Position numbers and translations under genes: made by a program. A stretch of DNA of 64,000 bases from Ostrea edulis (Eukaryota): positions 76,074,001 through 76,138,000 of the forward strand of contig NC_079167.1 in the NCBI RefSeq assembly GCF_947568905.1. The letters are read 5' to 3'. Shown here in pieces: positions 10,838 to 64,000 of this stretch. Each line of letters begins with the position of its first letter. The stretch's first letter is position 1. The notes under the pieces are model-generated. The model was given only the letters and a program-made list of their open reading frames with translations. It did no database searches and had not been told where the DNA came from.

Positions 10838-10956
10838 TTCATATTGCTCTTGATCAAGAAACTTGTCGTGAATAAAGTATGACTGAATGACATGCATAAC
10901 CCTACATCCACACACTACTTTACCTAAATCTGGTAAAATAAGAAAACGTTTTAACG

Positions 10957-33354: not shown

Positions 33355-33765
33355 TAGGAAGGTGAAGATAACGAACAGTGATCCATCTCGCAACTCCTAT
33401 CATCAATACAAAATAGAGAGGTGGGCAAACACGGACTCCTGGATATACCAGAAGTGGGATCAGGTGCCTATGGGCTATAAGGAGTAAGCACCCCCTGTTG
33501 ACCGGTTACACCCGCCGTGAGCTCTATATCTTAATAAGGCAAACGGAGTTACCCTTATTCAATATCATTGTGCCAAAAACGGCCTAACAATCTATATGAA
33601 ACAAGTCAGACAGATTTGACCCAATGATAGGTTGTATTGGCAAAGTAGATTGTTATAACGACCATATAATCGCAAAATGCTGACTTTAAACGAAACAGTT
33701 GAAACCCCTTCACCATCAACTTGTTTGTCAGTAGCCTGCCTCCATTTAAAAACTAATCATATACA
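33355..33765 (-). mobile_element. Penelope-like element 3' fragment
   Basis: Reverse complement is homologous to 58650-59038. Confidence 0.8.
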
Positions 33766-35348
33766 GATTTTTTTTCGCGATTTGTCTACATTTTGACTAT
33801 ACAGGACCCGTTCCGATGTCGAACATTCTTGACGTTGTGTCGCATCCTGTGAATGCATGTAGAAAGGGCAAGGATTGACAAACTTCGTTTCCTAAAAAGA
33901 CGTCTGGTTTTAACGATATTCTTCACTTAGGGGCAAGATCAAAAATTCAATGTCTCACAAAAAACTAAGTTCACATAGTTTTCACCAAGAACACCCCCCC
34001 CCCCCCTTTAAAACTTAATATGACAAATGTTGAAACTAATCGAATAACAAGAAAAGAAACGTACGATTATAAATAACACTCTGTATACCTTTTCTACTGT
34101 TTATTCACAAATGAAAGTGTACATTAAATCTATTAAATGTTTATTAATATGTTTTAAATATTATGTGGTATTCAACAGTCGCTTGTCTTTTTCCTTTTTC
34201 CACTAAAGTGTAATCGATGTCGGATGACAGAAACTTACGGGAGTTTTTATTCCCCTTTCCCTAACTAATTGAATTTAAATTTTCATCCGTTTCATTCAGT
34301 TATGTTTATTTCAGAGTTCGTTGCTATTTCTGTGCTTCATATATAGACATTTCAAACACAATGTGCATTTTATATGATCCTCTAAAATTTACGATAAATA
34401 ACTGTATCCCATTTCCATTCTCAATGATCGTGTGCCATCGTGGCGAGAATTCCATCGTCATCGAAAACAAGTTTTGTCTTGAATAGATGGCCGGGCGGTC
34501 TAGCGCGCTGTTCGCATGCTGCTAGGAGATGTGGTTCCGCAGGTCGTGAGCCCAAGACTAATTAGAAAGAGTAACTACTCGATTTTACATCAAATCATGA
34601 TACTATGCGCAAGTGTTTATTATTTATATTATCAATGTTTTATTATCATTATTATTACCCATGAATGACTCCCCAAACCTGAATTTGAAAAAGAAAAGCA
34701 AAAATACTTTACTTACTTAGTTTTATAAAAGTTTTTATACAAAGCGCTTGCTCAAATGATGAAGATACAAAATAACTGAAACTTTTAACTTTAAAGCCAT
34801 TTCCATACTTTCTTTTTTAACAACTAATTCCCCCTTGTAAATTGACACTAATTCTTTAAGACTTCATTTATAATTGATTATTCATAACTTTTAAAGTAAA
34901 TATTGTGTTTTATAATTAAAATTAATTCAGTAGAGGGTCAAACAAAATATTTTGAAGCTATATATTCGCGAAAGTTCCCCGGAAATGGAAGTCGGCAAAG
35001 AATATGAGATGCTGAGCAATATTGTATGTATATAGAAGGTCTTAAAATCACCTTTTTAATACAACTGTTTAGCTGTTTAATCGCGTTTTTTATTACATGC
35101 ACTTTAGATCGTCGTGTATAACTTTATTCCGATGACTGTCACAGTTAAGTTACTCCCCTTTACGTGTACGGTGTGCCGTAAATATCACAAAATATCGATG
35201 GTTTACTAAAACATTTAAGTCTAAATTTGAAATATTTCCCATTGTCCGATTTTTTGTATGTTGTTAATCACGCTTTTGTTTATTAAATTCCATCGAGTTT
35301 GTTTCTGTTGCAATTACTTTGAGGTGATTTGCTAGATTGACTAGACTA

Positions 35349-40469: not shown

Positions 40470-40972
40470 AACTCCCATATTTATGGAGCAATTTTCCATT
40501 ATCACCTGCATGTGATGCTTATGTCTCTCAACTGATTCGATACGCAAGAGCCTGTTCTGCGTATGAACAGTTTATAAATCGAAGAAGGCTTCTGACAAAC
40601 AAGTCGATGTTTGCTAATTCTATGGTCGTTATAACAATGTAATTTGCCAATATAACCAAACATGGGGTCAAATGCTGTCTGACTTGTTTCATACCAGTTG
40701 TTAGGCTGTTATTTATACATTGATTTTGACAACCGATTACTCCGTTTACCTTATCAAGATATATGGGTAATGGCGAGTGTAACCAGTCGACAGGAGATAC
40801 TTGCCTCTCCTGGGCACCTGACCCCCCCCCCCCGGGCACCTGACCCCCCCCCCCGGACACCTGACCCCCACCTCTGGATTATACATAGGGGTCCGTGTTT
40901 GCCGAACTCTTAATTTGTATTCCTTGCAGGAGTTATGAGATTGATTACTGTTCATTATCTTCGTCTACGTCA
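40470..40972 (+). mobile_element. Decayed Penelope-like 3' fragment
   Basis: YVSQLIRYARA-coding segment and shared 3' UTR, with an internal GCACCTGACCCC triplication. Confidence 0.75.
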
Positions 40973-41985
40973 AATAATGACCGAAAGAATATAATTCCTG
41001 GAAATTTCCTATTAATGGGACTGTCATCAAGAGTTAATCCCGTGGGGATCTGGATAAGAATAGATTTATTTCGTCCAGAGCAAACATTTTATACTATTCT
41101 CGTATTACAAACAGCACATGTGGCTAGTCTTTTTTTTTGGGGGGGGGGGTGTTTTCTTTTTTCATTATTATTGTTTTGTACAGGTGATTGTAGTTTGCTT
41201 TCTTAGATAATTTTATTATTTTGGATTTGTTTTTCGCCAAATATTTGTCATCTCTTTTGCTTTTCAGTTCCGATTTTCCATTTTTGCTCGTTTCTGTCGT
41301 TGCTCATTCCAGATCAATTGCTTTACTTAGAGTGATTAAGATCACCATTGACAAAAAAGTATCTATATGTAATCAACACAATGGAAACCTGTTAAATCAA
41401 AACGACGAACTGTGTTAACGACATTATATTAAACTTTGCTATAAACCTTTTTTCAAAACTGAAAACTAACTTCACATGTTTTATATGTAAAATGAACAGA
41501 ATTTATCGTACGGAATGTATCTTAATGTTTTTCAATTAAGTCCTAAAACAGTGGGTGGGTGGGGGGATTGTTATACAGTTAAATGGGTTAGGGTTTATAT
41601 ATTTCACCTGTATAACATCATAGGGAATTTCGCTTATTTCTAAAGGATACTATATTTGTATTTATTACAACAATATCAACCTGTGCAACCATGTTTTGAA
41701 ATCGAATGTCCTGAGGGTTGTGAACAACAAACAACTAAACAAAACTGATATGATATATTTAGCGACGATGTAACCCTTCCGTGTTTTTTTAGCTATCATC
41801 TGGAAGTAATATCCTAACTCTCGAAACGTAATTACATGTATATACAAATAAATTTCAATGTGACTTTTTTGTCAAATCTACCGCTAAACTTCAAATCCCA
41901 ACCTTTCATGTGATAACGTATGAGCTCAGAAATCTGTGATATTGATACGATCTGTAAATGCTATATATATATAGTCACACAGCAA

Positions 41986-42514
41986 GGCCGGATCCAGAGA
42001 GGGGGTCCGGACCCCTCCCCTTTTTTGCGGACCAAACAATTTAAGTTATTCAATTTCAACGAGACTTGGAGTCGTTATGATATGATAGGTGGATACTTGC
42101 ATGTAATTGCATCATTCATATTTATCAACATCAGTACATGTATATCATTTAATTCTAGGCTAAATAAGGATTTTGCACCTTTTACTGGCCTATTGGGAGT
42201 AACCTTTAAATAAGTTTTTTTAATTATTTAAAATCAGATGTTAGACGAATTTGACTCCACTTTTTTGGCACACTGTTTTCCCCTATAATAGCTCTAAAAC
42301 TTCATTGTTATTTCGGATTTCAAACATTTCGGTTGAGCATCACTGAAGAGACATTATTTGTCGAAATGCGCATTTGGTGCATCAAAATTGGTACCGCATA
42401 CGTTTTACATGTATACAAGCAAAAGGTGTAAATGGGGTGGGGGTGTAGATTGTGAAATGTAGCTACATGTAAAAGAAGTGCTAGACACCCCCTTCACAAA
42501 TTCCAGGATCCGCC
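41986..42514. mobile_element. Possible MITE with imperfect GGCGGATCC-type TIRs, enclosing hammerhead repeat 1
   Basis: GGCCGGATCCAG at 41986 and CCAGGATCCGCC ending at 42514. No clear TSD. Confidence 0.4.
42337..42380 (+). ncRNA. Minimal type I hammerhead ribozyme, intact core, within a repeat spanning ~42241-42410
   Basis: Stem I GCATCA/TGGTGC, CTGAAGA core, stem II GAC-ATTATTT-GTC, GAAA, palindromic TGCGCA stem III, AUU triplet (cut after 42374). Confidence 0.9.
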
Positions 42515-43027
42515 GATGCACAGCTATTGGTCAAGTTCCCTGCTCTGGCTTTGAGTAAATGTTTTATCCTTGAGTTCATTCATCAAAGAAAACGCGAGTC
42601 TAATCATGACTATATTTTAGTAATCCTACACTCACATGAAGTATAAACAACACATGCTATTTAGGATATCATAAAACAACATTAATCTGAATCAAGTGAA
42701 TATCAGCACTATCAATGAAACAGATTGGGTCCTCTTTCACTTTTTTTTCAATATTGTCTCACGAAATGATATTCCACACCAATACTTCATCTGATTCAGA
42801 GGCAAAACGATACGTTTGATTTCAATAATAAGGATAATTGAGAATAAATAAACAATAAATGATATGTTGAAATGAATCTGGGTTTTAATGGGCATTTGAT
42901 GATTGATACCTTTGTAGTGCTTCATTTTGTAAATAGGAAAAATCCAATAGTTGTCCTTTAATCATATTCGATCAATCTCTCTTTGTTAGTAAGCACTGGA
43001 TCATATGACGATAAATAGTCCTTACAG

Positions 43028-43038
43028 TATATATATAA
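43028..43038 (+). promoter_or_regulatory. Putative TATA box of the GPCR gene
   Basis: TATATATATAA about 85 bp upstream of ATG 43120. Confidence 0.45.
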
Positions 43039-43119
43039 GCCCGCTTGAGCTCCTTCAGGAAAGTGCCTAACTAAATTCATAATGTAGCAATTTATCCTGT
43101 TCGTTTAAAATCTTGGAAA

Positions 43120-45258
43120 ATGAACACAGCGCACTTTATTTATGTTCTCACACTCTGCTCTGTGCAGTATGTGTTGTGTGAATTGAATCCGGAATATTTT
43201 CCCGCCATTTTTCAGACGCCTGAAGAAGAATATTGTCAGAAGAGATACCGGTGTCAAGGACGATCTCGCTTTTCCGCTCTGGACAACTGTAGGTGTGATC
43301 CTGAATGCTTGATATACGAGGACTGTTGCCATGACTACAGAAGCAACCACACAGTTGTGAAAAAAGCGATTCCAAGACTTTCATGTGAGTTTAGAGGTGA
43401 TATTGACTTTGAAAATTTCATTTACATTGTGAATTCTTGTCCTTCTGGCACTGATTCATATCTTAGAGAGAAATGTGAAGCCGAGAACGATGTGTTCGAC
43501 CATCCATCCAGTGGCCCTAGTTCGCGATATTTGTATAAAAACATATATTGCGCTATATGTAATTTTGATGATTACATCATGTGGAATCCAGCAATCCAGT
43601 GTCATTGGGATTATATACCTCCAGACAAGAATCTGTCCGTATCCTCCTTAAAGAATGATACCGGATGTTACGTCACATACTCGCCTCCAGAAGAGAATCT
43701 GAAACAGCGGACTTGTTTTCCAATCAATGTGACGGAATGTCAGAACGTGACTTTGATGACGTTATGTAAAAACGGATATTACGTGCTTCTATTTGGACTG
43801 AAAATTGTCTTAAGAAACATCTACTGTGCGAAATGTGAAAGTTATCTCGAATCAAACCTAACATGTCATATGAAGGAAACAAAGTTAACGCCTTATAAAC
43901 CAGTGAGAGATTCGTACCTCCATAGCTACAGAATTCTATTTGATCTAAATTTGAAAAAGGAGATAAGAGAGAGGAGCTTCCGACAAAGATTGATTGGGTC
44001 ATCTACGAATTCACTATCTAATGTCTGTAGCACAGATCATCTTCTGGATCCTTTGACAGGACAGTGTTATAAGATAATGTGCAAACCTCCGTTTATTTAT
44101 CAAAATGGTAAATGTGTATTGAACGCACGATTTGCTAATGACCCAAACAATACCTCAACATCATGCCTCTCTCGAATTTTTCACCAAAATGAGTTCGAAT
44201 TAATTAATTCCACCACCATTTTTGTGTTCTCCCTCAATAGAACGATGCATGATTTTACGCTCTCAGAAAATGAAAGCGATGCGTACGTTTGCATAAACGG
44301 AACAGAAATTGATCAAATGACTTACACAAGACTTGCGATCTATTTTTCAAAAGAAGAGAGTCTGTTGTCTTTCGTTGGTGGAATCTTGTCATTAACGTGT
44401 CTGCTAGTGTGTTTCACTGTTTACGTTTGTTCCCCCAAGCTGCACAATGTTCCCGGCAAAAACCTTATGTGCTTGATGGCATCCTTGTTCGTTGCGCAGT
44501 TGTTACATTTGGTAGCGCCATTTATCTTCGAGTTGAAAAACCAAAGTTTATGCAAGGCCCTATCTATTGTAACGCATTTTGCTTTCCTAGCTGCTTTTTT
44601 CTGGATGAATGTGATGTCTTTCGACATATGTTTCATATTTTCAACGGGGTTTACTAATTCGGGTGAAAGGGGAAGTCCTTCAAAGCGTGTGCTGTTTTAC
44701 AGGTTCTATGCTTGGTTGGGTGCTGTTATCATAGTTGGGTCTGCAGCCTCGGTTGAGTATACTTCGGATTCAAGTTTTAAACCCGGATATGGTGATGGAG
44801 TCTGTTGGATTTCAAATAGCAGAGGGTTGATGGTCTTCTTCCTGGTCCCCATCGCAATTCTGTTGTTTTCAAATTCTGTTTTCTTCCTAATATCTGCCGT
44901 AAGTATACACATGTCATCCAAGAAAACTTCCCGGATTCTGAAGAGAAAGAACACTTGCAAATTACTAATTTACACAAAACTGTCGGTTGTGATGGGGTTA
45001 ACCTGGTGTTTTGGTTTCTCGGCAGCGGCAACTAATAGTCAGGCGTTGTGGTATTTGTTCATTTTCTTCAACACTTTACAAGGATTCTTTATAGCAACTT
45101 TCTTTTTATGTACGAAAAAGGTGTTCCAAATCGTCCGAGATGGTGCTTCTTCATTTTATTCCAATACCAGGTCGCTTACTGTTAAAAAATCTTTAACTTC
45201 AAAGTCTGGGAATGAGAAAGGTAGAAATGCTTCTAGAAAATTCGAAGCCCGATATTAG
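43120..45258 (+). CDS. Intronless family-2 (secretin/adhesion/Methuselah-like) GPCR with N-terminal somatomedin-B-like domain
   Basis: 712 aa. Signal peptide, CRCDPECLIYEDCCHDY, Cys-rich ectodomain, seven hydrophobic helices with HFAFLAAFFWMNVMSFD (TM3), PGYG..CWI (ECL2), VMGLTW (TM6) and NTLQGFFI (TM7). Confidence 0.93.
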   Translation: MNTAHFIYVLTLCSVQYVLCELNPEYFPAIFQTPEEEYCQKRYRCQGRSRFSALDNCRCDPECLIYEDCCHDYRSNHTVVKKAIPRLSCEFRGDIDFENFIYIVNSCPSGTDSYLREKCEAENDVFDHPSSGPSSRYLYKNIYCAICNFDDYIMWNPAIQCHWDYIPPDKNLSVSSLKNDTGCYVTYSPPEENLKQRTCFPINVTECQNVTLMTLCKNGYYVLLFGLKIVLRNIYCAKCESYLESNLTCHMKETKLTPYKPVRDSYLHSYRILFDLNLKKEIRERSFRQRLIGSSTNSLSNVCSTDHLLDPLTGQCYKIMCKPPFIYQNGKCVLNARFANDPNNTSTSCLSRIFHQNEFELINSTTIFVFSLNRTMHDFTLSENESDAYVCINGTEIDQMTYTRLAIYFSKEESLLSFVGGILSLTCLLVCFTVYVCSPKLHNVPGKNLMCLMASLFVAQLLHLVAPFIFELKNQSLCKALSIVTHFAFLAAFFWMNVMSFDICFIFSTGFTNSGERGSPSKRVLFYRFYAWLGAVIIVGSAASVEYTSDSSFKPGYGDGVCWISNSRGLMVFFLVPIAILLFSNSVFFLISAVSIHMSSKKTSRILKRKNTCKLLIYTKLSVVMGLTWCFGFSAAATNSQALWYLFIFFNTLQGFFIATFFLCTKKVFQIVRDGASSFYSNTRSLTVKKSLTSKSGNEKGRNASRKFEARY

Positions 45259-45711
45259 TGTAGTACAGAAACTTTGTAAGAGATCTCATCTATTCATCAA
45301 GAATTTTGTTTGTTTGTTTTTGAATGAAAGGAATTACCGCCATAATTCCAAGCATCCTTCTCGTATTCTTAATTGTAGCATATGGCATTTTTAATTTCAT
45401 GCTACGTAATATAATAACATTTCAATTTCAGGGACTAAACCCAAAGAAAGACAGCGATTTAGTTTAGATCACATCTTAGCTTAAATCTACGACTGCTTAA
45501 GGGTATGCGTAAGTTCTTAGACTATACAACTTCCTGGTTTTTTTTTTGGGGGGGGGGTTCTTTTTTTTGCACTTGTTTTCATGCGGCTTCCTTCTTTTTC
45601 ACTTCCGAATATACACCTTTCCAACTTTTTATATTTGTATTTTCATCATCAAATTCCCTGGTCCCACGGGTACCATGATATATGATCATTGGGGATGCTA
45701 TAGTCCTTTCT

Positions 45712-45955
45712 CTCGTGGTAGCTCAGTGGTAGAGCGTTCGCTTCGTAACCGATAGGTCGCTCGTACCGTGGCCGCGTCAAACCTAAGCCGTTAACATATG
45801 TAGCGATTGCCCCTTTGCCAACGCTTGGCATTTAGAAGTGAGAGTTACGGGTCCTTCGGATATGACCTTAGAAACTGAGGTCATATGCCGCGGTAGGCGT
45901 TGGAACATTCAAGAACCCTCAGCGCTAAGCAAAAGTCTAATTTGTGGTACTTCAC
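45712..45955 (+). mobile_element. tRNA-derived SINE with partly deleted B box
   Basis: GGTAGCTCAGTGGTAGAGCG A-box head at 45717. Body shares CCTTCGGAT..GACC..GAGGTC..GGCAC core with the other SINE family. Confidence 0.7.
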
Positions 45956-46145
45956 TACAGATAGGATACGGATGTATATTTAATTGCTGGGATAAAATTT
46001 AGAAATTCATTTCAAAATTAAGGATTATCTCCCTCATGCATAGCTCTATCCTTGGACGAATTTGGCTCCAGTTTTTGGCACTCTAGTTTTCCTTTTAGCT
46101 CTTACAAGTTTATTGTTATTTCGAATTTCCAAAATTTCGGCTTGA

Positions 46146-46189
46146 GCATTACGGAAGAGACATTATTTGTCGAAATGCGCATCTGGTGC
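46146..46189 (+). ncRNA. Minimal type I hammerhead ribozyme with core mutation (CGGAAGA), within a repeat spanning ~45975-46219
   Basis: Same architecture as 42337. Stem I GCATTA/TGGTGC, AUC triplet (cut after 46183), U4 changed to G. Confidence 0.85.
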
Positions 46190-46588
46190 ATCAAAATTGG
46201 TACCGTATAAGTTTTACATAGCAACGTCTCGGTATGAATAAAAAATGAGTGAAAAATTCTCTACAAGATGTAAAACAACCTCTCTGTCTCTCAGCAAATT
46301 ATAACATTGCGTATCATGTATATTGACATGTGTTGTTCTCAGACACGTAGCTTCTTCAAAGAAGGGGAGGTAAACTGAGACCTTCAAGGAAACCTAATAT
46401 TCCCCAATCATTAAATCGTTAGTGGGTGTAGGATGAGGCAATGTTCTTTTCATTGATGCAATCTTACATTTTTACTCTCATTTTTACTACTGTCATAAAA
46501 AATCAAAGGACGGGGTGTAATGGGATAAGCGGCCAATAAACGAAGATTTTAAAGACTTATACTCTTCGGTCTTGACAAAAAACACAGC

Positions 46589-46892
46589 ATCGTATTGTAA
46601 TGTACATCGTATTGTAATGTACACCGTATTGTAATGTACATATTGTAATGTACATCGTATTGTAATGTACATATTGTAATGTACATCGTATTGTAATGTA
46701 CATATTGTAATGTACATCGTATTGTAATGTACATCGTATTGTAATGTACATCGTATTGTAATGTACATATTGTAATGTACATCGTATTGTAATGTACATC
46801 GTATTGTAATGTACATATTGTAATATACATCGTATTGTAATGTACATCGTATTGTAATGTGCATATTGTAATGTACATCGTATTGTAATGTA
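46589..46892. repeat. Minisatellite of mixed 17-bp (CATCGTATTGTAATGTA) and 14-bp (CATATTGTAATGTA) units
   Basis: Direct reading; no spacers. Confidence 0.95.
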
Positions 46893-47222
46893 TATCGATG
46901 TATTTTTTGCGATTGAGAGAGGGATTATTGATTCGCCTCATGTAATTGTCTCTAAGCAAATAGATGGTGATCTGTACATGCTTAGTAATCAGCTATGAAG
47001 TTTAAGATTTTGGACATACCTTGCTTCCAGAAAAGCAATTTTGGAACATAAAACTATTGGCATAACTTAGTTATTCGTACGAACTAAATTACGCTAAAAT
47101 ATACGCCTTTTTAAACAGCCCCGGAAGTCGTCCGGCTGTCCGTTTCGTATCCGAGGTGCAATTGTTGTAACGAATGCAATGTCCTCTGGTGTAATAATGA
47201 GACATAAAATGACGAATGCAAC

Positions 47223-49410
47223 TGTAGAAAAATTGGGTATCTAAGTTACGATAGGGGCGAATTGCCAGGGGGTCCGCTCTCTTTTTACTAGAAGTGGAAA
47301 TCCCGAATTTCTCTCTTAGCTCCGGGATTTTAATAGGCAAGGCCGCGTTATTTTTAAATGATCGGGTTTTAGTGTTGGTTTTTGGGGCAGAGGATCGCGT
47401 TATTGACGTCACCGGTAGGATTGTTTAGGTCACCTGCGCCGTGGATGGTCGGAGGTGGAAGCCATTTTGAAATGTATGAATTTTTGGTTACTTTTATTAG
47501 TATAGATATTTATATGTAATTGTTGATATCTTGTCTTATTTATTCTGGTTTGTGGTTAGGAAGGAATTCCAATGGCGTGGTATTCTGGTCAAGGTAGTCC
47601 CAGATGGTTAGGTGACGGGAGGCACCCAAGGGGGTAAGGCAGTTGGGCAGGGAAGCTTGGTGGGTACACAGGTGTAGGGGGATGCGGTGTCACTGGGTGG
47701 CAGGGGTATTCCGGGGGTGGCGTCACGGGCACCCAAGCATGGAATGCAGGGCCACAAGAGGGACTTGAAATGGAGCGAACTTACCAACTTGATGGAATTG
47801 GTTCTATTGTAGTTTCAGGCCAGGGGCATGGAACCGGGACAGTTAACCTGTCACAGACACTGAAGGATATAGAGGCCAAAATAGAGGCTCAAAGGAATCA
47901 GTCTAATCATTACAGACGGGTTGAAGCAGTGGCTTATCAAATCTATGGGGAGGCTTCCCCCAAGTTACCTGCAAAATATACTACTGTGTGCTGGTCCGAC
48001 GTTGGTTGTGTTGCGTCTAGGTCTACTTGGGATGACCCTGTGCATACGGGAATTGTGTCTCTGTCCGGCGTGGTCAGGGTCGCTGATGATTGGTGGGATA
48101 TAAGTGTTCTCTCTCAGATTGAGAGGCTTCCCCCTGATAAACTCCAAAATAATGAACTAGATTGGTTTGTTGTCCGTGGCTTCACGAGTTCCTATTAGTC
48201 ATGGGGTGATTACTATGTAGCCCAGGTTCAATGAACAAGGGACAACCCAAGTTCAGTCATCGCAAGAAGGTACGGATAAAAATGAGTTGTAAACTCCTTC
48301 ATGCTCACAGGGCCCCGAAATCCGGGGAACAAAAGCTTGGCCTGTAGTAATCCCGTCGTTGGTAGGCGGGGCCTTTCCTTGTAGTGTTACATCTGCTGAT
48401 CTGGAGGCTGTGATGCCCTATGGTGTGGTGTCCCATATTCTGATGTGTCTGTCCTGTGTCGTGTTCGTGTGACGAAATTCGTGACCGTATGTGACTCTGT
48501 GATGTGACTTTCCTGTTTGTGGATTTCATGGGACGTGCTGTGTGACTGTGACATTCTGTGTTGTGAACTCCTTTTTGTACTGTTAAAGTATTATGATTTA
48601 TAAGTTTATTATACTGTGAATCATAGGTGAAATTAATTCATTGATTTGTAATATTGTATGTACCTATTGTAAGCTACAGTGCTGCAGGTTAAATTTGTCG
48701 GAATTGGAACATTCCTCCTCAAAAGGGGGAATGTTGTGATTGGGGAGTAAGATTTCCGGTCGAGATTGGAGTCCTATAATGTTGTATGTCCTACTCAGTC
48801 TCTCTTACCCGCGAATTCTCAAAGCGAGCGGGTGTGTTTTGTAGAACGCAGCACTGTGGTTATTGTATACATGCAGTATTTGTAAGATGTCCTGTTTATC
48901 AGTACATATATTTGTTTATAAGTGTTTTTCTGGTGTTCGGTTTACGGAAAATCACTTAATCAGTATATCAAATTAATGGTGTGTGATCGTATTTTCAACT
49001 GTTAAAATCTAATTAATTTAAGGGTAAATTTTATCCGTGTCCAGAATTACTTTGATATGTGTATTGATTTAATGTGCGGTTTCAACACCAGCCAGAGAGG
49101 AGTTTGGGGGTAATCACAACAATAGCTTTTTCAGATAAATCTACCAGTGAAGGGCCTTTCTATTTTGGAACAATCCTTCTCAAAATGGGGGGAATGTAGT
49201 GAAATTGGGTTCTAAATTACGATAGGGGCGAATTGCCAGGGGACCCGCTCTCATTTTTATCGGAAGTGGGAACTCCGACTCTCTTTCCTAGCTCCAGGAT
49301 TTCAAGAAACAAGGTCGCGTGTTGACAGCCCAAAGAATTGTGTCAGTAATTGTCATTTATTGTGTGTTTTTAATACATATTCTTTAAGTGATCGGGTTTT
49401 AGTGTTGTTT
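47223..49410 (+). mobile_element. Non-autonomous LTR-retroelement composite
   Basis: Direct repeats starting TGTAG..AAATTGGG at 47223 and 49195, the latter preceded by a polypurine tract. A second LTR at 48732-49121 has TGTTGTGATT/AATCACAACA termini and its own polypurine tract. Confidence 0.75.
47572..48198 (+). pseudogene. Uncharacterised ORF inside the LTR element, Gly-rich N-terminus, one in-frame stop
   Basis: ATG 47572 is in frame with the 142-aa ORF at 47770, with a single TAA at 47635-47637 between them. Confidence 0.5.
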
Positions 49411-49579
49411 TCCGGCCTTTGTTTTCTTCAGTTTACAATGAAGCATACTGGGATTCAATCTCTACCCAGAGTTATCGTTCCTTACACTCATTTACACCTC
49501 TGTCAATGTCTCAAGGAACGACAACTCTGGGTAGAGATTGACTGGGATTAACAAGGAAAGCGGAACTACAAGTGAATCT

Positions 49580-51590: not shown

Positions 51591-51860
51591 AGAATTAAGA
51601 ATGGAAATTAAAATGTGTTAAGCTAACATGGAAGTAAGAATGTCATATATTAAAATCAAAGTTAGAATTGAGAATACAAGAAGGACGCATAAAATTATGG
51701 CAGTAATTGTCTTCCATAGCTCTAGCTTTGGTTAATCCCCCTCTCTTTTTTATAAACTAGTGTTGCAACATGAATGCAGTGTTTATTCTTATCTTCGAAA
51801 TATCAACTATATATAGAAAACGGAACACGCTGGACTGGTCTGAAACCTGACGTTAATGGT

Positions 51861-52157
51861 ATGAAAAGTGAAGATAATGAACAGTGATCAATCTCATAAG
51901 TCCCATAAGCAATACAAAATAGAGAGTTGGGCAAACACGGACCCCTGGACACACCAGAAGTAGGATCAGGTGCTTAGGAGTAGTAAGCATCCCCTGTTGA
52001 CCGGTCATACCCGTCGTGACCTTATATCTTGATCTGATAAACGGATTTACCCGTAGTCAAAATCAGTGTGCCAAGAACGGCCTAGCAATCGGTATAAAAT
52101 ACGTCAGAGAGCATTTGACCCAATGATAGGTTGCATGGACAAACTACATCGTTATGT
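51861..52157 (-). mobile_element. Penelope-like 3' fragment
   Basis: Reverse complement is homologous to 58740-59038. Confidence 0.8.
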
Positions 52158-53299
52158 TGAGTCAATATTCAGATTGCTTTTAATTGATATACAAATCTGC
52201 GACATTGATGTTCAAAATATGTACAAAATCAATCTAAAACAAGCATTCTGAGAGTATTGCATAAGCAATACATGGCCCATACCGACTCCCCCACTAATTG
52301 TCGAATGTACAGTTGATGTTGTTTGACCTTGAACTGTGACCTGATACACTGGTATCAAGTCACCATGTTTAATAGTATCGAATTATTTTAATGTGTCGTT
52401 GTTCATACCGTTGACGCATGTAGTTTTTATCACAAATGAAAAAGTCTTAGTCCGTGGAGAAATATTTAGATAATCGTGCAAATGGAAAACAAATCAACAT
52501 ACCGATATAACATCTCATATTTGTATTCTAAATACTTATAAAGGACTTCTAAATACTACTTACTATCAACTGTTTGAAGCCTGTCTTCGAATATACCCGC
52601 GATAGCAGTAATGCGCTAAATTGAGAACTGCCGAAGGTGCTCACTGACTGCACAAAAATAATCGCGTGGAAGAGACTGACAGAGAGAGAGGAACGGACAG
52701 AAAAGAAAGCTACAGGAGACTAATAAAATGCTTTCGAATTCAAACTCAGCCGTATTTGAAATTTTTAACCCAAAGACTAGGGTTGTTAGAAAACCCAACT
52801 ATCCGCCATCTTTTAAAGAAATATCTTTATCTAAAAGAAGAAATTTTTCCAAAAGAAAATATTTCTTTTCATTTCATTCAAGTTTATTCAGGTATAAAAT
52901 ATCACCGAATGTCATGGTTATCAATTTGAAACCTGGCATATAATCTATAGCACTATGCAGCTATAACGGTTAAAGAATAAGTAACTGTATGAATAACATG
53001 ACATATGATGATATAATAACCTAAGGATAACCCATAAAAGCTTAAATTAGCTTATTTTAATTGTTGTTTTTAATATTTATATAATGGATGTGATCAACAG
53101 ACAAAACAGAATAAAAAGGTTACATGATTAACAATTGGAATTTTGACAGGTTTTGATTAATGGTTGCATAAAGCGTTGAAAATTGACAAGCCTCAGACAA
53201 TTTTATAATAGATTACTATAATACTAAAGTGTCAAAAAATACGTATTAAACAAAATTGTACATGATACCTTGTTTTACCGCTTGGCTTGCTGGAAAATA

Positions 53300-54484: not shown

Positions 54485-54885
54485 ATAATCAGTTTTTAAA
54501 TCGAGGCAAGCTACCGACAAGCAAGTTGATGGTACAGGGGTTTCAACAGTCTCGATTGAAGTCAGCATTTCGCAAATTCTATGGTCGTTATAACGATCTA
54601 GTTCGTCAGTACAGCCTATCATTGGGTCAAATGCTGTCTGACGTGTTTCATACCGATTGCTAGGCCGTTCTTGGCACACTGATTATAACTACGGATAACT
54701 CCGTTTACCTGATCAAGATATAGGGTTCACGGCGGGTGTGACCGGTCGACAGGGGATGTTTACTCCTCCTAGGCACCTAATCCCACCTCTGGTGTGTCCA
54801 GGGGCCCGTGTTTGCCCAACTATCTACTTTGTATTGCTTATAGTAGTTGTGAGATTGATCACTGTTCGTTATCGTCACCTTTCAT
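54485..54885 (+). mobile_element. Penelope-like 3' fragment
   Basis: SAFRKFYGRYNDLV-coding region and the shared 3' end TCACCTTTCAT. Confidence 0.85.
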
Positions 54886-56165
54886 CCAATAAATGAGAGT
54901 CATGTTTTCCATGTATGCATTCTTCCATAAAAGAGGGTGGTAAACTTACAGGGAAATAGCCATAATCATGGTATCCTTTCAACAGGATTCTTGCCACAGA
55001 TTTCCATTCTTCATCTTGCATATCGTATCTTGTTATAGGTATTGTGAATGTATACCCTGTGGTGCACTCTTCATAGAATTCTGACCAAAATTCGCTGAAC
55101 ACATCCCTAATCATCCCAATTCCATCACCAGCTTCGAAATCCAAAGTTTTCTGCTGAGCAGCTCTTTTAACAACTACATGTATGTAATCATTCAAGATCT
55201 CTGCATCCATGAAATTGTTCATCAAATCTTTCAAAATGTTGCCTTCATGAACAATAACTGATCTAACATTTTGTTTTTCTGTAGAATCTGTAGTTGGTCT
55301 AGTTGGAATTTCTATTCTGGGTAAGCTATCAAAAGGAATTGCAGATGTCTCTCCCAGTTGTGGTATTGTTACAAATGTATCTTCAGTAGGAAGAGATATT
55401 GTGTTATTGAGAGATATCACGTCTGGTGGAAATGGTCCAAACTGAACAATTCCGGAGGAATCATCTAAGCTTGGATTTGGCAAACTTTCTACATTTGAAA
55501 GAATACCTGCTTCCTCCGCAGCAACTTCAAGTATGTGTTGGGTCTTTTGGGGGGTTGATACCAAATAGACTCTGATAATTCCAGACTTGTATGATAATTC
55601 CAGACTTGTATGATAATTCCAAACTTGTATGATAATTCCAAACTTGTATGAGTCATACATGTCACCTATACTAATACTTGCTTGAATGGGAGATTCTGCA
55701 AAATCCCAAATGATCAAAGTCAAAGTCATCCTTTCGGAGAAAACCCATTCTTGAAAAAAAAAAGGGTTTAGCACTTCTCTTGTATTATCTTCTTTTGTTG
55801 CCATCCTGTGCATTGAAATTTTTCTAGTCCCCCCTCCCTGTTTTAGGCCTACTTGTTTGCAATCATCTTCTTCCTTTACAATCCAACCAATGTTGCATTT
55901 TCATTCCCAAGTAGATTTCTTTTCCTTGATTTTTGAGATTTTTTAAAGTCAGCACTGTCAGAGTCTGAATCGTCCGATTTTCCCCCTCCATATCTTGTCG
56001 GTACCTTTTTTTGTAAACGTTCCAATAAAGTTTGCTTTCTTTTTGATAAATCTTGTGATGGAGGTTTCATGAAATTCCTAAGAGCTAGCCTGTCCCCATG
56101 GGCAGGACTATATCTTTTCAATTCTTCATCAGCTATAGCCTTCAAAACATCTCTGTATTTACAAA
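54886..56165 (-). pseudogene. G2E3-like HECT-domain gene remnant
   Basis: EAGDGIGMIRDVFSEFWSEFYEECTTG..WKSVARILLKGY..YFP. The upstream ORF (DEELKRYSPAHGDRLAL..LLGNENA) joins via a frameshift at ~55885 (GW..KQ..GGGTRK). Truncated at the Penelope-like copy. Confidence 0.65.
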
Positions 56166-56639
56166 GTTTTAACATCTCTGTCAATCTACAAAGTTTAAAC
56201 ATCTCTGTCAATCTATAAAGTTTTAACATCTCTGTCAATCTACAAAGTTTTAACATCTCTGTCAATCTATAAAGTTTAAACATCTCTGTCAATCTATAAA
56301 GTTTAAACATCTCTGTCAATCTACAAAGTTTTAACATCTCTGTCAATCTATAAAGTTTTAACATCTCTGTCAATCTACAAAGTTTTAACATCTCTGTCAA
56401 TCTATAAAGTTTAAACATCTCTGTCAATCTACAAAGTTTTAACATCTCTGTCAATCTACAAAGTTTTAACATCTTTGTCAATCTACAAAGTTTTAACATC
56501 TCTGTCAATCTATAAAGTTTGTCAATCTACAAAGTTTTAACATCTCTGTCAATCTATAAAGTTTGTCAATCTACAAAGTTTTAACAGCTCTGTCAGTCTA
56601 CAAAGTTTAACATCTCCGTCAATCTACAAAGTTTTAACA
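56161..56639. repeat. 27-bp tandem repeat (ACAAAGTTTTAACATCTCTGTCAATCT)
   Basis: About 17 units, some shortened; produces the LTEMLKLCR ORF. Confidence 0.95.
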
Positions 56640-56834
56640 TTATACCTCTATATTGGATTGATTAGTAAGACAAGTAACGTAGTGACAGTTCTACTCCTTC
56701 CTATATAAAACTAATGCAATTTAGAACCATCATTTCAACTATTGAATCAATTTTCACACTCACATAAATGAATACACACATTTTAGTGAGAGAGCTTCAG
56801 GGACAGCATAATCACGCCTTTAGTTTTTTCTTAA

Positions 56835-57165
56835 ATATCATGGAGTAGAAAATTTTTCCAAGATCTAATACATTTTCACCATATGCCCATATAGGCCCTT
56901 CCCTAGGGCCTGAACCTCCGACACAGAGGCCATGTATTTCACAATTTCGGTAGAGGCACCCTTGCTCTTTATAACCATGTACTCAGTTTATCTGCTAGAC
57001 CCCAGGAGTAGAGAGGAAAATTCTTAAAGATTGTTTCAATTTTTACAGTTTTTGCCCTAAATTCATGGCCTCTGGGGATATTGGGATCATGAATTTCACA
57101 ATTCACTTTCCCCTTCCCCTACATATGCTACACTAAATTTAGTCAAAATTGGCCAAGTAGTTAAA
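56835..57165 (+). repeat. Cg170-like satellite monomers (oyster HINE core), about 1.7 copies
   Basis: Resembles the recalled ~166-bp oyster HindIII repeat (CATG..TTTCACAATTTCGGTAGAGG..CTCAGTTTATCTG..GGAGTAGAG). Confidence 0.55.
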
Positions 57166-57169
57166 TAAA

Positions 57170-57910
57170 TATGAAGATATCATCAATACATTTGATGCAC
57201 ACCACAATCTAATTAAAGATATCTTCAAATAATTAATGATATCTTCAATTCTAAATTATTGCGTGCATTAATTGAATTGACGATAGCATTAATTCTTCAG
57301 CTGAATTGATGCGCACTTCAATTGAATTAATGATCTCTTCAAATGAATTAATGATATCAACAATTGATATAATTGATATTGTTGAGAGCAACAGTGGATA
57401 TAATGCGCGCATTAAATCAATTGATGAGAGCAATAATTGAATTGATGTGCGCATTAATTCATTTGATGAGAGCAATAATTGATTTGATGCGTGTATTAAT
57501 TCAATTATTGCTCTCTTCAATTGAATTAATGATATCTTTAATTCATTTGAAGAGAGCAATAATTCTTTTAGAGAGAGCAACTATATAATTAAAGATATCT
57601 TTAATTCAACATATCCACAATTGAATTAATGATCTCTTTAATGGAATTGTTGCTCTCTTTAAAAAAATTGATGCGCGCATTAATTCCCTATACAAAAGCA
57701 TTGTAAATAATCAAAGATATTTTCAATTGAATTAAAGAGATCATCAAATTATTTATACCGAGCTCTAAATTGATTATTGTGAGCAATATTTCTACGAAAC
57801 TGCATGAAGCTCTCATCAATTGAATTGAAGAGAGCAATATAATTGAATTAATGTGCACATCAAATATATTATTGCTCTCATTAATTCAATACGGGATATC
57901 GGAACTATAA
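57170..57910. repeat. Modular bidirectional low-complexity repeat
   Basis: GAGAGCAA, GATGCGCGCATTAA and AATTGAATTAATGATCTC modules occur in both orientations. Confidence 0.8.
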
Positions 57911-58075
57911 AAAGTTTGGAGCTCTTCAGAAAAAGAAGTTACGAAAATGATGCGTCACTTAGGCAACTCTTGCACATACAAATTAGTGATGCTAAAGACG
58001 ACTCATTTTTCATACAAAAATATCTGTTGATTTGAAGATTATTTTTTTTTCAAAATGTCGCTAGTGAGTACCCTA

Positions 58076-58158
58076 GTACTTACTTACTTAATCCTCTTCG
58101 TACTAGGAAGCACATAAGGCCTTCACTGAGGATCACCAAGTTCCTCAGTGTTGGTTTC
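58076..58158 (-). mobile_element. 83-bp 5'-truncated RTE-like LINE end with 20-bp TSD
   Basis: TGTCGCTAGTGAGTACCCTA at 58056-58075 and 58159-58178; minus-strand tail GAAGAGGATTAAGTAAGTAAG. Confidence 0.75.
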
Positions 58159-58390
58159 TGTCGCTAGTGAGTACCCTAATACCAAAAACAAAAGTTCTTA
58201 ATTTAAATTCCTGATGGTTGGTAGCAGAGACAAAACAGAAAATTCACAGTACCGTTTATTTTCTCCATTGTATGTAAATATTTACTTAGCGAGATTTTCT
58301 CGAGTCATTATAACAAACGACTGCAGTCAAATGATACAGATTTTTGATGAATAAAAAAATAATCACAATTAATGCATCAATCTCCAGACA

Positions 58391-59038
58391 TGCACGCTAG
58401 TGAAATGCAAGGTTGAAATAAAGGACACAACAGAGTCGCCCACTTCTGCTTCATACTTAGATATTTTATTGAAAGTAGACATTAACGGCAAACTAACAAT
58501 TCAACTGTATGACAAACGGGATGATTTCAGCTTCTCCATCGTCAACTTCCCACATTTATGTAGCAATATTCCATTATCACCTGCATATGGTGTTTATATA
58601 TCTCAACTGATTCGATATGCAAGAGCTTGTTCTGGGTATAGTCAGTTTTTAAATCGAGGTAAGCTACTGACAAACAAGTTGATGGTACAGGGATTTCAAC
58701 AGTCTCGATTGAAGTCAGCATTTCGCAAATTCTATGGTCGTTATAACGATCTAGTTCGTCAATACAACCTCGCATTGGGTTAAATGCTGTCTGACGTGTT
58801 TCATACTGATTGTTAAGCCGTTCTTGGCATATTGATTTTGACTGCGGATAACTCCGTTTACCTGATCAGGATATGGGGCTCACGGCGGGTGTGACCGGTC
58901 AACAGGGGATGCTTACTCCTCCTAGGCACCTGATCCCACCTCTGGTGTGTCCAGGGGTCCGTGTTTGCCCAACTATCTATTTTGTATTGCTTGTAGGAGT
59001 TATGAGATTGATCACTGTTCGTTATCTTCACCTTGCAT
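58391..59038 (+). mobile_element. Penelope-like element RT thumb and 3' UTR (longest copy)
   Basis: EIKDTTES..ASYLD..LYDKRDDFSFSIVNFP..AYGVYISQLIRYARA..FRKFYGRY; premature TAA at 58781. Confidence 0.8.
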
Positions 59039-59382
59039 AGCATACTTCATAAAATTTTATGTTACTTCAACTAATACAGTAAATAAAGTAGTATAATTCA
59101 TAAAATGTTACAGTATATTAACTAGTACATTTGATAAAGTAGTATAGTTCATTAAATCTCATATTACATCACCTAGTACATAAAATGAAGTAGTACAGTT
59201 AATGAAGTATTACGTTACATTAATTGGTACAGTAAATAAATTAGAATTGTGTTCATTAGATACTATGTTACATTGAATTGTACACTAAATACAATAGTAT
59301 AGATCATAAGATATTACGTTACATTAAATAACACAGTAAATAAAATGGTATAGGGCATAGGATATGACTTTACATTATATAG

Positions 59383-59471
59383 TCCAGGGGTCCGTGTTTG
59401 CCCAACTATCTATTTTGTATTGCTTGTAGGAGTTATGAGATTGATCACTGTTCGTTATCTTCACCTTGCAT
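59383..59471 (+). mobile_element. Penelope-like extreme 3' end
   Basis: Matches 58950-59038. Confidence 0.85.
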
Positions 59472-59910
59472 AATACAGCAAATAGAATAGTGTAGACCAT
59501 AAGATATTACGTTACATTAAATTGTACGATAAATAAATATAATAGTTCATAGGATAGTACCTTTTATTAAATTGTACAGTAAATAAAGTAGTAAAATTCA
59601 TTAGATATTACTTTACATCATATGGTAGAGTAAATAGACTAGTAGAGTTCATACGATGTACCATTACACAATATAATATACTTATTAGAATAGGAGAGTT
59701 TTACAAAATATTAATTTTCATCAAATAGTAAAGTAAAGAAAATAGTATAGTTCATAAGATATTACGTTACATTAAATAGTACAGTAAATAAAATCATGAA
59801 ACAAGTAGTATGGGAAATACAAAGGTATAGTTTAGAAATTATTAAGTTAGATATTAACTAATGCAGTAAATAAAACAGGATAGTTAATGTAATAAAATGT
59901 TAAATGAAAG

Positions 59911-59982
59911 CCCCCGTGGGGACCCGGGTTAGAATAGATCCTCAGTTTCCCTTGCTTGTTGTAAGAGGCGACTAACTGGGGC
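59911..59982 (+). mobile_element. SINE 5' module only
   Basis: CCCCGTGGGG...GGCGACTAACTGGGGC. Confidence 0.8.
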
Positions 59983-61830
59983 TATATGATTAAAATATTT
60001 TGCGAAATTAATTACAAGAGTAAGTAAAATAGAACAGCAAGTAGAATAGATAGAATAGTACAGTAAATGAAACGTTATAGTTGATGTAAAAGGACATTAA
60101 ATGAACGGGTACAGGAAATGGAATATTTGAAGTTGTAAATAAAGTGGTACAGTAATCGAATTAGGTATAAAGTGCAGGTTATAAAAGAGTGTAGTTAATT
60201 AAAAACCATGGTCCATTCATCAATATGGCGCAAGGATTGTACAGTAAATGAAATAGGTGTAATAGTACAGTCAAATAAATAATACGGTATATGAAATAGT
60301 ACAAAATGTGAAATAGTGATGTATAGTAAAGGAAATAAGAAAAATGGGACAGTAATAGAAATAGGAAAAATAGGACAGTGAGAGAAATGGGAATATTAAG
60401 ACAGTAAATTAAGTAGGGAAAATAGGACAGCGTATGAAATAAGGAAAATTGGATAGTAATTCAAATAAAAAAAATTGGACAGTGATCAAAATAGCAAAAA
60501 TAGAACAGTTATTGAAATAGGAAAAATAGGAGAGTCTAAAATTGAACAAAAAATGAAATAAAAGATTAGACCAGAAATAAAATAGGAAAATTGGCGCAGT
60601 GAAGTACGAAAAACAGGGCAATAAGTGAAATTGGCAAAATAGGAACGTAAATAAAATAGTAAAACATGACAGTTAATGAAATAGGCAAAATAGGAGAGAA
60701 AATGAAATAGCAATATAGGAGGGTCAATGAAATAGGCAAAATAGGACAGTAAGAGATATAGGAAAAGTAAGACAGTAAATGAAGTAGATAAGATAGGACA
60801 TCAAAGGATAATGGGAAAGTAGTGCAGTAAATGAAAAGGGAAAATAGGATAATAATTAAAATAGGACAGTAAATGAAATAGTAAGATAGGGCAGCAAGTG
60901 AAAGAAGAAAAATAATAAAGTAAATGAAATAGAAAAATTAGGATATTGATTTGATTACATGTATGAGAAATGGGGCATTCAACGAAATAGGAAAATTAAG
61001 AGACTAAATGAAATAGGAAAAGTAAGAGAATCAACTATGATAAAATAGGACAGTAACTGAGATAGGGAAAATATAGCAATAAATGAAATCGGAGAAACAG
61101 GAAATTTATGAAATAGCAAAATAGAGCAGTAAATGAAATAGCAAAATAGGAGTGTAAATAAAATAAGGAAAATAGGACAGTAAATAGATTAGGAAAAATA
61201 GGACCTTGATAGGACAGGGGAAAATTAAAATAGTAAAATAGGGTATTAAATGAAAGAGGAACAATAGGAAATTAAATGAAATACGAAACCTACTGCATTC
61301 ATTTATTTAGGAAAAATGACATTTCCTAAAATGAAATAAAAGACGGGAGAATAATAAAGATGACAGAAATAGGAAAATAAATGAAATAACGAAGTAGATT
61401 GGTGAATGAAATAAGAAAAATAGGACAGTATATGGGATAGGAGAAATAAGATAATAGATGGAATAGCAAGAATATTAGCATAAAAAATAACCGAAATATG
61501 GCAGTAAATGAAATAGGAAAGATATGGTAATAATGAAAATGGAATGAGTAGACCAATGACGACATAAAATGAAATAGGAAATATAGATCAATAATTAAAG
61601 TAGGAAAGAGAGGACAGTAAATTAAATAGGAAAGACAAGATAGTAATTAAGGTAGGAAAAATGGGGTTAGTAATTAAAATAGAGAATAAAGGATACTAAA
61701 TGAAATAGGAAAGATAGGACAGCATTTGGAATAGAAAATAGATAGCACGTAAACATAATAAGGAAAAATAAGAATTTCACTGAAATTGAGAGAATCTGAT
61801 AGTAATTGAAATAGGAAGGATAGGTACTTA

Positions 61831-62408
61831 AATATCTTATTGAAAGTATATATTAACGGCAAACTAACAAATCAACTTTATGACAAACGGGATGATTTCA
61901 ACTTCTTAATCGTCAACTTCACATATTTATGTAGCAATATTCCATTATCACCCGAATATGGTGTTTATATATCTCAACTGATTCGATACGCAAGAGCTCG
62001 TTCTACGTATGGCAGTTTTTGAATAGAGGCAAGCTACTGACAAACAAGTTGATGGTACAGGGGTTCAAACAGTCTCGTTAGAAATCAGCATTTCGCAAAT
62101 TCTATGGTCGTTATAACGATCTAGTTTGCCAATACAACCTATCATTAGGTCAGATGCTGTCTGACTTGTTTCATTCCGATTGTAAAGCCGTTCTTGGCAC
62201 ACTGATTTTGACAACGGATAACTCCGTTAATCTGATCAAGATATATTGTTCACTGCGGGTGTGACTGGTCGAAAGTTGATGCTTACTCCTCCTAGGCACA
62301 TTGTCCCACCTCTGGTATATCCAGGGATTCGTGTTTGCTCAACTCTCTATTTTGCATTGCTTATAGAAATTATGGGATTGATCACTTTTCGTTATCTTGA
62401 CCTTTCAT
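61831..62408 (+). mobile_element. Penelope-like RT thumb and 3' UTR
   Basis: NGKLTNQLYDKRDDFNF..ISQLIRYARA; shared 3' end. Confidence 0.85.
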
Positions 62409-63246: not shown

Positions 63247-63318
63247 ATCCCGTGGGGATCCGGGTTAGAATAAATCCTCAGTACCCCTTGCTTGTCGTCA
63301 GAGGCGACTAAATGGGGC
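63247..63318 (+). mobile_element. SINE 5' module only
   Basis: ATCCCGTGGGGATCCGGG...GGCGACTAAATGGGGC. Confidence 0.8.
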
Positions 63319-63971: not shown

Positions 63972-64000
63972 CTAGTATCGATCTGAAAATTTTACTTTAC

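What the first reader, a model, noticed from the sequence alone, without database searches (positions are those of the whole stretch)
46146..46242. Hammerhead ribozyme apparently inside the GPCR 3' UTR, disabled in cis but with an optimal cleavage site
Seen: a sense-strand minimal type I hammerhead ~890 nt after the GPCR stop. Reading by eye, I find no AATAAA or ATTAAA between the stop (45258) and the ribozyme; the first AATAAA is at 46237-46242, just after it. The core reads CGGAAGA instead of CUGANGA, but the AUC triplet, stem I 3' strand and palindromic UGCGCA stem III are intact. Established: Penelope-associated minimal hammerheads with palindromic stem III cleave as dimers, where one copy's core cuts the other copy's NUH site, and a 3'-UTR hammerhead lowers expression of rodent Clec2 mRNAs. 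Inference: this mRNA may resist self-cleavage yet be cut in trans by transcripts of intact copies of the repeat, a TE-RNA-dependent switch on a receptor mRNA.
Basis: partly seen in the sequence, partly recalled or inferred. Interest (0 to 1): 0.8.

Follow-up and report, generated by a model that had tools for sequence, protein, structure and literature searches.

The report
Decayed transposon hammerhead downstream of GPCR
The motif is real, but it is a core-mutated copy of a very abundant oyster retroelement tail carrying a minimal hammerhead ribozyme; it landed about 0.9 kb after a receptor gene, and nothing I could test shows that it regulates that gene.

Summary
At 46146-46189 (+) there is a type I hammerhead: stem I GCAUUA/UGGUGC, core CGGAAGA (U4 changed to G at 46153), stem II GACA/UGUC, GAAA, loop-less palindromic stem III and an AUC site that would be cut after 46183. 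No AATAAA or ATTAAA lies between the GPCR stop (45258) and 46237.

It is one of two same-strand copies of a repeat. Copy B spans 45966-46220; copy A spans 42241-42413 and keeps an intact CUGAAGA core. Both are 5'-truncated and share one 3' end. In two DNA runs their summed contig depth is roughly 40,000 times the unique flanks, so this is a very high-copy retroelement tail of the Penelope/retrozyme kind. This scan has already noted many such hammerheads elsewhere in this oyster genome.

Both copies are absent from the two homologous Ostrea edulis loci, where similarity stops 28-40 nt after the stop codon. No run on record as RNA holds the locus, so whether the motif lies in the 3' UTR could not be tested.

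The trans-cleavage idea fits the dimer topology (predicted A+B dimer -30 kcal/mol against -10 each) but has no evidence. Published minimal hammerheads of this kind cleave poorly even as dimers. The most likely reading is a neutral transposon relic. Interest is low.

The parts
46146..46189 (+). Core-mutated type I minimal hammerhead (copy B): CGGAAGA core (U4 to G at 46153), stem II GACA/UGUC, GAAA, loop-less palindromic stem III AUGCGCAU, AUC site with the predicted cut after 46183
   Evidence: RF00163, 22.2 bits, full-length alignment
45966..46220 (+). 5'-truncated copy B of the high-copy hammerhead-bearing retroelement tail. The family 3' end is at 46219/46220; contigs from other copies continue upstream of 45966 with their own consensus.
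   Evidence: (depth table, loose ends at 45966, 46219 and 46220)
42241..42413 (+). Copy A of the same repeat, truncated further at the 5' end, about 86% identical to copy B. It carries an intact hammerhead at 42337-42380 (CUGAAGA core, AUU site).
   Evidence: (RF00163, 27.3 bits)
43120..45258 (+). Intronless 712-aa ORF of a secretin/adhesion-type GPCR (7tm_2, weak somatomedin B match), under purifying selection (dN/dS 0.32-0.38 against O. edulis homologues)
45713..45965 (+). tRNA-derived SINE-like repeat (A box TAGCTCAGTGG) that abuts copy B. It lies between the GPCR stop and the hammerhead.
   Evidence: tRNA model, 21.4 bits, below threshold; summed depth about 2000 times the unique flanks; loose ends at 45713
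46237..46242 (+). First canonical AATAAA after the GPCR stop, 17 nt beyond the end of the repeat
45287..45712 (+). Single-copy 3' flank with no canonical poly(A) hexamer (only AATGAA, AATATA and ACTAAA variants) and a T/G-rich run at 45539-45570. It does not align with either O. edulis locus.

Best explanation
The motif is the hammerhead of a 255-nt, 5'-truncated copy of a very high-copy oyster retroelement tail, of the kind known as Penelope-like pLTR hammerheads or non-LTR retrozymes. The copy inserted, together with or next to a tRNA-derived SINE, into the fast-turning-over DNA downstream of an intronless adhesion/secretin-type GPCR gene. It has since picked up a U4-to-G change in the catalytic core. 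Having no stem III loop, it could never have cleaved as a monomer, and with the core change it is dead as a catalyst. It is most likely a neutral relic. If GPCR transcripts do run through it to the AATAAA at 46237, it is a passive passenger in the 3' UTR. Shown here: the motif, the repeat nature, the shared 3' end with variable 5' truncation, the very high copy number, and the absence from homologous loci. Inferred: retrotransposition as the origin, and the lack of function.
For: Two same-strand copies share an exact 24-mer and about 86% identity over about 170 nt. In DNA runs X3 and X6 the summed contig depth is about 1.0-1.2 million and 0.29 million on the repeat, against about 25 and 6 on unique flanks. 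Hundreds of contigs diverge exactly at 46219/46220 into unrelated AT-rich flanks, and at 42241 and 45966 on the 5' side. That is the pattern of 5'-truncated retroelement copies. Both copies are absent from the syntenic O. edulis locus L002 and from the paralogous L003, although neutral DNA still aligns at about 76% nearby (47922-49455). Rfam Hammerhead_1 aligns both copies full length with the same loop-less stem III architecture. The monomer's minimum-energy fold is an alternative hairpin that hides the cleavage site. Literature: minimal or type I hammerheads occur massively in metazoan PLEs and retrozymes, work as dimers and have low activity in vitro (PMC4209133, PMC7229834, PMC6765202). 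PLEs are very abundant in oysters (PMC8557442).
Against: There is no canonical poly(A) hexamer between the stop and the motif, and the first AATAAA comes just after it, so read-through into the element is plausible. The substrate half is fully intact and the site is AUC. No Penelope RT/GIY-YIG ORF lies in the window, so the autonomous partner of this family was not identified here. Depth sums are not true copy numbers, as the tool itself cautions.
Confidence: 0.85

Rival explanations
1. The GPCR mRNA extends about 980 nt to the AATAAA at 46237, so the dead-core hammerhead sits in its 3' UTR. Transcripts of intact copies of the repeat pair with it through the palindromic stem III and stem I and cut it after C46183. 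Receptor mRNA level would then depend on transposon RNA abundance.
For: No AATAAA or ATTAAA lies before 46237. The predicted heterodimer of copy A and copy B has the required topology, with A's stem I 5' strand and core facing B's AUC site, at -30 kcal/mol against -10 for each monomer (rough Kd about 1e-7 M). Retrozyme RNAs can be very abundant in bivalve tissues (PMC7229834). Contigs of the repeat are abundant in two runs guessed to be RNA.
Against: There is no RNA evidence that this gene is expressed or where its mRNA ends. The insertion is lineage-specific. A family of this size puts sense copies near many stop codons by chance. Minimal PLE hammerheads cleave poorly even as covalent dimers (PMC4209133, PMC6765202). 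The site region is mostly paired in the local fold (mean unpaired probability 0.37). Abundant retrozyme RNAs are highly self-paired circles (PMC7229834).
Confidence: 0.03
2. Both copies lie on one long primary transcript, either a read-through or a host-gene intron (in O. edulis the homologous GPCR is nested inside a same-strand GLTP gene). They dimerise within that molecule: copy A's intact core cuts copy B's AUC site, while copy B's dead core leaves copy A uncut.
For: The copies are on the same strand, 3.8 kb apart and flank the ORF. The dimer topology is as above. The O. edulis homologue lies inside a called GLTP gene on the same strand.
Against: No GLTP exon or spanning transcript was shown in this window. 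Upstream synteny with L002 ends at 41572. The ribozyme class has low intrinsic activity. Both insertions are lineage-specific.
Confidence: 0.02
3. The hammerhead tail and the abutting tRNA-like SINE (45713-46220, 508 nt) form one composite SINE-like retroposon with its own pol III promoter, comparable to the schistosome Sm-alpha elements. On this reading the hammerhead RNA is made from its own promoter and not as part of the GPCR mRNA.
For: The A box is at 45721-45731. The SINE 5' end is at 45713 and the repeat 3' end at 46220, with no strongly supported break listed between them other than 45966. Three X3 contigs join 46219 back to 45719, which indicates head-to-tail units of about 501 nt elsewhere in the genome. 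SINE-like hammerhead elements are known (PMC6765202).
Against: Depth on the SINE part is 20-50 times lower than on the hammerhead tail. Runs of five to six T, which act as pol III terminators, lie inside the repeat upstream of the hammerhead in both copies (46066-46070 and about 42263-42268). Copy A has no SINE head.
Confidence: 0.1

Closest known systems
Minimal or type I hammerheads of Penelope-like element pLTRs and metazoan non-LTR retrozymes (Cervera & de la Pena 2014, PMC4209133; de la Pena et al. 2020, PMC7229834; Lunse et al. 2017, cited in PMC6765202)
   Same: Type I topology with 6-bp stem I and 4-bp stem II. Very short palindromic stem III with no loop, so only a dimer can form the active fold. 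Massive copy number in an invertebrate genome, with 5'-truncated dispersed copies. The host is a bivalve, where PLEs and retrozymes are abundant.
   Different: This copy has a U4-to-G core mutation. It is solitary, not in a tandem array. No RT/GIY-YIG ORF is adjacent in the window. Stem II is the short canonical 4 bp, not the 6-8 bp described for many PLE min-HHRs.
Discontinuous hammerhead in the 3' UTR of rodent Clec2 genes (Martick et al. 2008, as summarised in PMC6155905)
   Same: A hammerhead sequence downstream of a stop codon, on the sense strand of a receptor-type gene.
   Different: The Clec2 ribozyme is type III, complete and active in cis, lies within a mapped 3' UTR and is conserved in several mammals. 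Here the motif is type I and core-mutated, has no loop in stem III, is not shown to be in the mRNA and is absent from homologous loci.
Schistosome Sm-alpha / Sj-alpha SINE-like hammerhead retroposons (PMC6765202)
   Same: A possible pairing of a pol III-type head with a type I hammerhead, and occasional head-to-tail units.
   Different: The link between the SINE head and the hammerhead tail is not established here, and T runs upstream of the hammerhead argue against pol III read-through.

Membership tests
Hammerhead ribozyme, type I (Rfam RF00163) | Conserved core CUGANGA ... GAAA ... NUH | tested here: not met
   Copy B reads CGGAAGA (G at U4, position 46153); GAAA and AUC are intact. Copy A at 42337-42380 meets it with CUGAAGA, GAAA and AUU.
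Hammerhead ribozyme, type I (Rfam RF00163) | Three helices around the core with open stem I, and a score at or above the curated gathering threshold (34 bits) | tested here: inconclusive
   The helices are all present and the model aligns over positions 1-45 of 45, but the scores are 22.2 bits (copy B) and 27.3 bits (copy A), both below 34.
Hammerhead ribozyme, type I (Rfam RF00163) | Self-cleavage activity | not testable with these tools
   This needs an in vitro transcription and cleavage assay. From established mutagenesis (Ruffner et al. 1990, recalled from memory) changes at U4 strongly reduce activity.
Penelope-like element pLTR hammerhead / non-LTR retrozyme | Short palindromic stem III that allows only a dimeric active fold | tested here: met
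   AUGCGCAU has no loop. The monomer minimum-energy fold is not the hammerhead fold. The AA and AB co-folds give intermolecular stems I and III.
Penelope-like element pLTR hammerhead / non-LTR retrozyme | High-copy dispersed or tandem repeat with retroelement-type 5' truncation | tested here: met
   Depth on the repeat is about 4e4 times the unique flanks. Copies share a 3' end at 46219/46220 and have variable 5' ends at 42241 and 45966.
Penelope-like element pLTR hammerhead / non-LTR retrozyme | Association with an RT plus GIY-YIG ORF (autonomous PLE), or a tandem array of 170-400-nt monomers (retrozyme) | tested here: not met
   The window has no ORF over 312 aa other than the GPCR. The two copies are 3.8 kb apart, not in tandem. 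Other places in the genome could not be read. Earlier scan notes report PLE-linked hammerheads in this genome; I did not check them.
3' UTR regulatory hammerhead (Clec2 type) | Lies within the mature mRNA 3' UTR | not testable with these tools
   No run on record as RNA holds the locus, and there are no contigs on its unique parts in X1 or X2.
3' UTR regulatory hammerhead (Clec2 type) | Conserved at the orthologous locus in related species | tested here: not met
   It is absent from O. edulis loci L002 and L003. Similarity ends at 45286/45297 and, for L002, resumes at 47922.

The most novel reading that the evidence does not exclude
A core-dead but substrate-intact hammerhead half, embedded in a receptor mRNA 3' UTR, is cut in trans by abundant transcripts of intact copies of the same retroelement family through stem III dimerisation. 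That would couple the level of a host mRNA to transposon RNA abundance, a natural trans-acting hammerhead.
Probability: 0.03. Interest if true: 0.8.

Novelty: new member of a known kind. Interest (0 to 1): 0.15.

Why it matters
As it stands this is one more decayed copy of a well-described class of transposon-borne hammerheads, so it matters little. The general idea is still worth one genome-wide test. With a family this large, hundreds of mRNAs may carry substrate-competent hammerhead halves. Natural trans-cleavage of host mRNAs by retrozyme or PLE RNAs has never been shown. A census of sense against antisense copies in 3' UTRs, plus 5'-OH end mapping, would test the idea far better than this single locus can.

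Tried and rejected
- An Rfam gathering scan of the whole window, and an E<=10 scan of 40-50 kb, found no hammerhead. Only scans of about 120 nt passed the filters.
- RNA evidence: the look-up of sequencing runs listed no run on record as RNA. Read laying showed that X3 and X6 are DNA. X1 and X2, guessed to be RNA, hold only the repeats plus one contig 8% diverged over 44310-45297 that leaves the window 40 nt after the stop. That contig comes from a paralogue or an orthologue, so it does not map this gene's 3' end.
- The exact-protein look-up found nothing, and the closest proteins are only 80-81% identical, so no transcript contig for this gene could be fetched.
- A Crassostrea-like Logan contig (L001) has at least 414 nt after its stop, but it is only 67% identical at DNA level and says nothing about this locus.
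- Aligning the 3' flanks of the window, L002 and L003 gives noise beyond about 45 nt past the stop.
- The block 47223-47348 shared with L002 has no clean reading frame in either sequence and gave no sign of a GLTP exon.
- The ORF at 47770-48198 has no Pfam match.
- No copy of the family occurs in the 24 kb of O. edulis sequence fetched, so no family consensus could be built to say whether AUC or AUU is ancestral.
- The search of earlier findings by sequence was blank.
- Lunse et al. 2017 (PMC5785218) is not held, so I cite it only through a review.

Full report
**1. The observation**

The sequence at 46146-46189 (+) reads as follows: GCATTA, CGGAAGA, GACA-TTATT-TGTC, GAAA, TGCGCA, TC, TGGTGC. 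This is a complete type I hammerhead layout.
- Stem I is open and 6 bp long, including two G-U pairs.
- Stem II is 4 bp.
- GAAA is followed by A15.1 through U16.1 reading AUGCGCAU, a loop-less palindromic stem III.
- The AUC triplet puts the scissile bond after C46183.
- The only departure from the core is G46153 where U4 belongs.

A second copy at 42337-42380 has the intact CUGAAGA core and an AUU site. The two share an exact 24-mer that is expected 0 times by chance. A strict descriptor scan finds only the intact copy in 64 kb, against 0-1 hits per shuffled window.

Rfam Hammerhead_1 (RF00163) aligns both copies end to end. Its own consensus also has a loop-less 4+4 stem III. The scores are 27.3 bits (copy A) and 22.2 bits (copy B), both under the gathering score of 34. 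The larger Rfam scans missed them.

The poly(A) statement is also correct. No AATAAA or ATTAAA lies in 45259-46236 and the first AATAAA is at 46237. The weaker hexamers are AATGAA 45323, AATATA 45408 and 45608, ACTAAA 45434 and GATAAA 45991.

**2. What the element is**

The two hammerheads are the conserved centre of a repeat about 86% identical over about 170 nt. I laid contigs of four public runs on 42000-46560.

X3 and X6 cover every bin, including the unique intergenic parts, at about 25 and 6. They are therefore DNA. Their summed depth on the repeat is about 1.0-1.2 million and 0.29 million. The tool warns that summed depth is not a copy number, but the order of magnitude (10^4) is clear.

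Hundreds of contigs leave the window exactly at 46219/46220 into unrelated AT-rich sequence, which marks the family's 3' end. Contigs also leave at 42241 and at 45966. At those two points the loose ends have a consensus of their own, so other copies continue further 5'. A shared 3' end with variable 5' truncation and huge copy number is the signature of a retroelement tail.

The architecture matches the minimal or type I hammerheads described in Penelope-like element pLTRs and in metazoan non-LTR retrozymes (PMC4209133, PMC7229834, PMC6765202). PLEs are very abundant in oysters (PMC8557442). Earlier notes of this scan say the genome is an oyster and list many such hammerheads on other pieces of it; I treat these as leads only. 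I did not find an RT/GIY-YIG ORF in this window, so the link to an autonomous Penelope element is by resemblance and was not shown here.

**3. The surroundings**

The ORF at 43120-45258 is an intronless 712-aa secretin/adhesion-type GPCR (7tm_2, E 3e-23). Its closest proteins are two O. edulis 'adhesion GPCR E2/E3-like' proteins at 80-81% identity.

Against both, dN/dS is 0.32-0.38 with dS about 0.3. It therefore looks like a working gene of a young family.

The O. edulis locus L002 is collinear with the window at 41572-41963, 42515-45286 and 47922-49455 (76-87% identity). L003 matches 42524-45297. The segments holding copy A (41964-42514) and copy B (45287-47921) have no counterpart, and neither locus contains the repeat. 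Both insertions are therefore specific to the window's lineage. Similarity to both relatives ends 28-40 nt after the stop codon, and L002 has an AATAAA about 170 nt after its stop.

Between the stop and the hammerhead lie 426 nt of single-copy DNA and a tRNA-derived SINE (45713-45965; A box present; depth about 2000 times unique) that abuts copy B.

**4. Is it in the 3' UTR?**

I could not test this.
- No listed run is on record as RNA.
- X1 and X2, guessed to be RNA, have no contig on any unique part of this locus.
- X2's 1228-nt contig over 44310-45297 differs at 8% of positions and departs from the window 40 nt after the stop, so it comes from a paralogue or an orthologue.
- No identical or >=90% identical protein is in the assembly collection, so no transcript contig exists to fetch.

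The absence of a canonical hexamer before 46237 makes read-through plausible, at roughly one chance in three by my judgement. Variant hexamers and a T/G-rich run at 45539-45570 offer earlier alternatives.

**5. How it would work, and how likely that is**

As a monomer, either copy folds into stem II plus an alternative hairpin (AUGCGC/GUGCAU) that hides the cleavage site, at -10 kcal/mol.

Co-folding gives the textbook dimer: an 8-bp intermolecular stem III, with each molecule's stem I 5' strand and core facing the other's site. The energies are AA -33.7 and AB -30.0 kcal/mol.

Several things count against a real switch.
- The class cleaves very slowly in vitro even as covalent dimers (PMC4209133, PMC6765202).
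- The site is mostly paired in its local context (unpaired probability 0.37).
- Abundant retrozyme RNAs are self-paired circles (PMC7229834).
- The insertion is not conserved.
- The arrangement is expected by chance. Assuming about 10^4-4x10^4 copies, about 3x10^4 genes and a 0.65-1 Gb genome (my assumptions), a sense copy within 1 kb after a stop codon is expected in hundreds of genes.

**6. Verdict**

The motif is a decayed member of a known kind of transposon-borne hammerhead. The regulatory reading is possible in topology but has no evidence and remains improbable (about 3%).

Noticed in passing
window 1-35000 (stem-loops at 3946-3991, 10793-10839, 19643-19688): Tandemly repeated histone gene cluster. 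Units of about 14-15.7 kb are repeated at 95-100% identity, with three Rfam Histone3 3' stem-loops above threshold.
   Followed up: no
window 45713-46220, and joints 46219->45719 in run X3: A tRNA-like SINE head abuts the hammerhead tail. Three X3 contigs join the tail's 3' end back to the SINE's 5' end with a period of about 501 nt. This hints at a composite or tandem SINE-hammerhead unit elsewhere in the genome, reminiscent of schistosome Sm-alpha. T5-6 runs upstream of the hammerhead argue against pol III read-through.
   Followed up: partly
window 46571-46912: Minisatellite of alternating 17- and 14-nt units (CGTATTGTAATGTACAT / ATTGTAATGTACAT), about 340 nt, just downstream of the finding.
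   Followed up: no
window 49455-49541; L002 2002-2063: A near-perfect inverted repeat of about 87 nt (MITE-like hairpin) that gives weak miRNA-model hits on both strands. A related copy is present in the O. edulis locus.
   Followed up: no
L002 (O. edulis OX387704.1:14699699-14711831): The homologous intronless GPCR of O. edulis lies inside a called same-strand GLTP (glycolipid transfer protein) gene, so it is a nested gene. Whether the window's GPCR is nested in the same way was not established.
   Followed up: partly
window 43120-45258 compared with L002 and L003: The three GPCR copies are about equidistant (dS 0.28-0.30, dN/dS 0.32-0.38), which suggests a near-simultaneous duplication or speciation of a young adhesion-GPCR-like subfamily.
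   Followed up: partly
window 54485-64000, 40526-40966, 33359-33767 and 51860-52196: A dispersed repeat of about 300-640 nt is present in at least six copies in the window and also in both O. edulis loci at 70-90% identity. Tandem arrays with 27-nt (56060-56599) and 26-nt (60297-62894) periods are also present.
   Followed up: no
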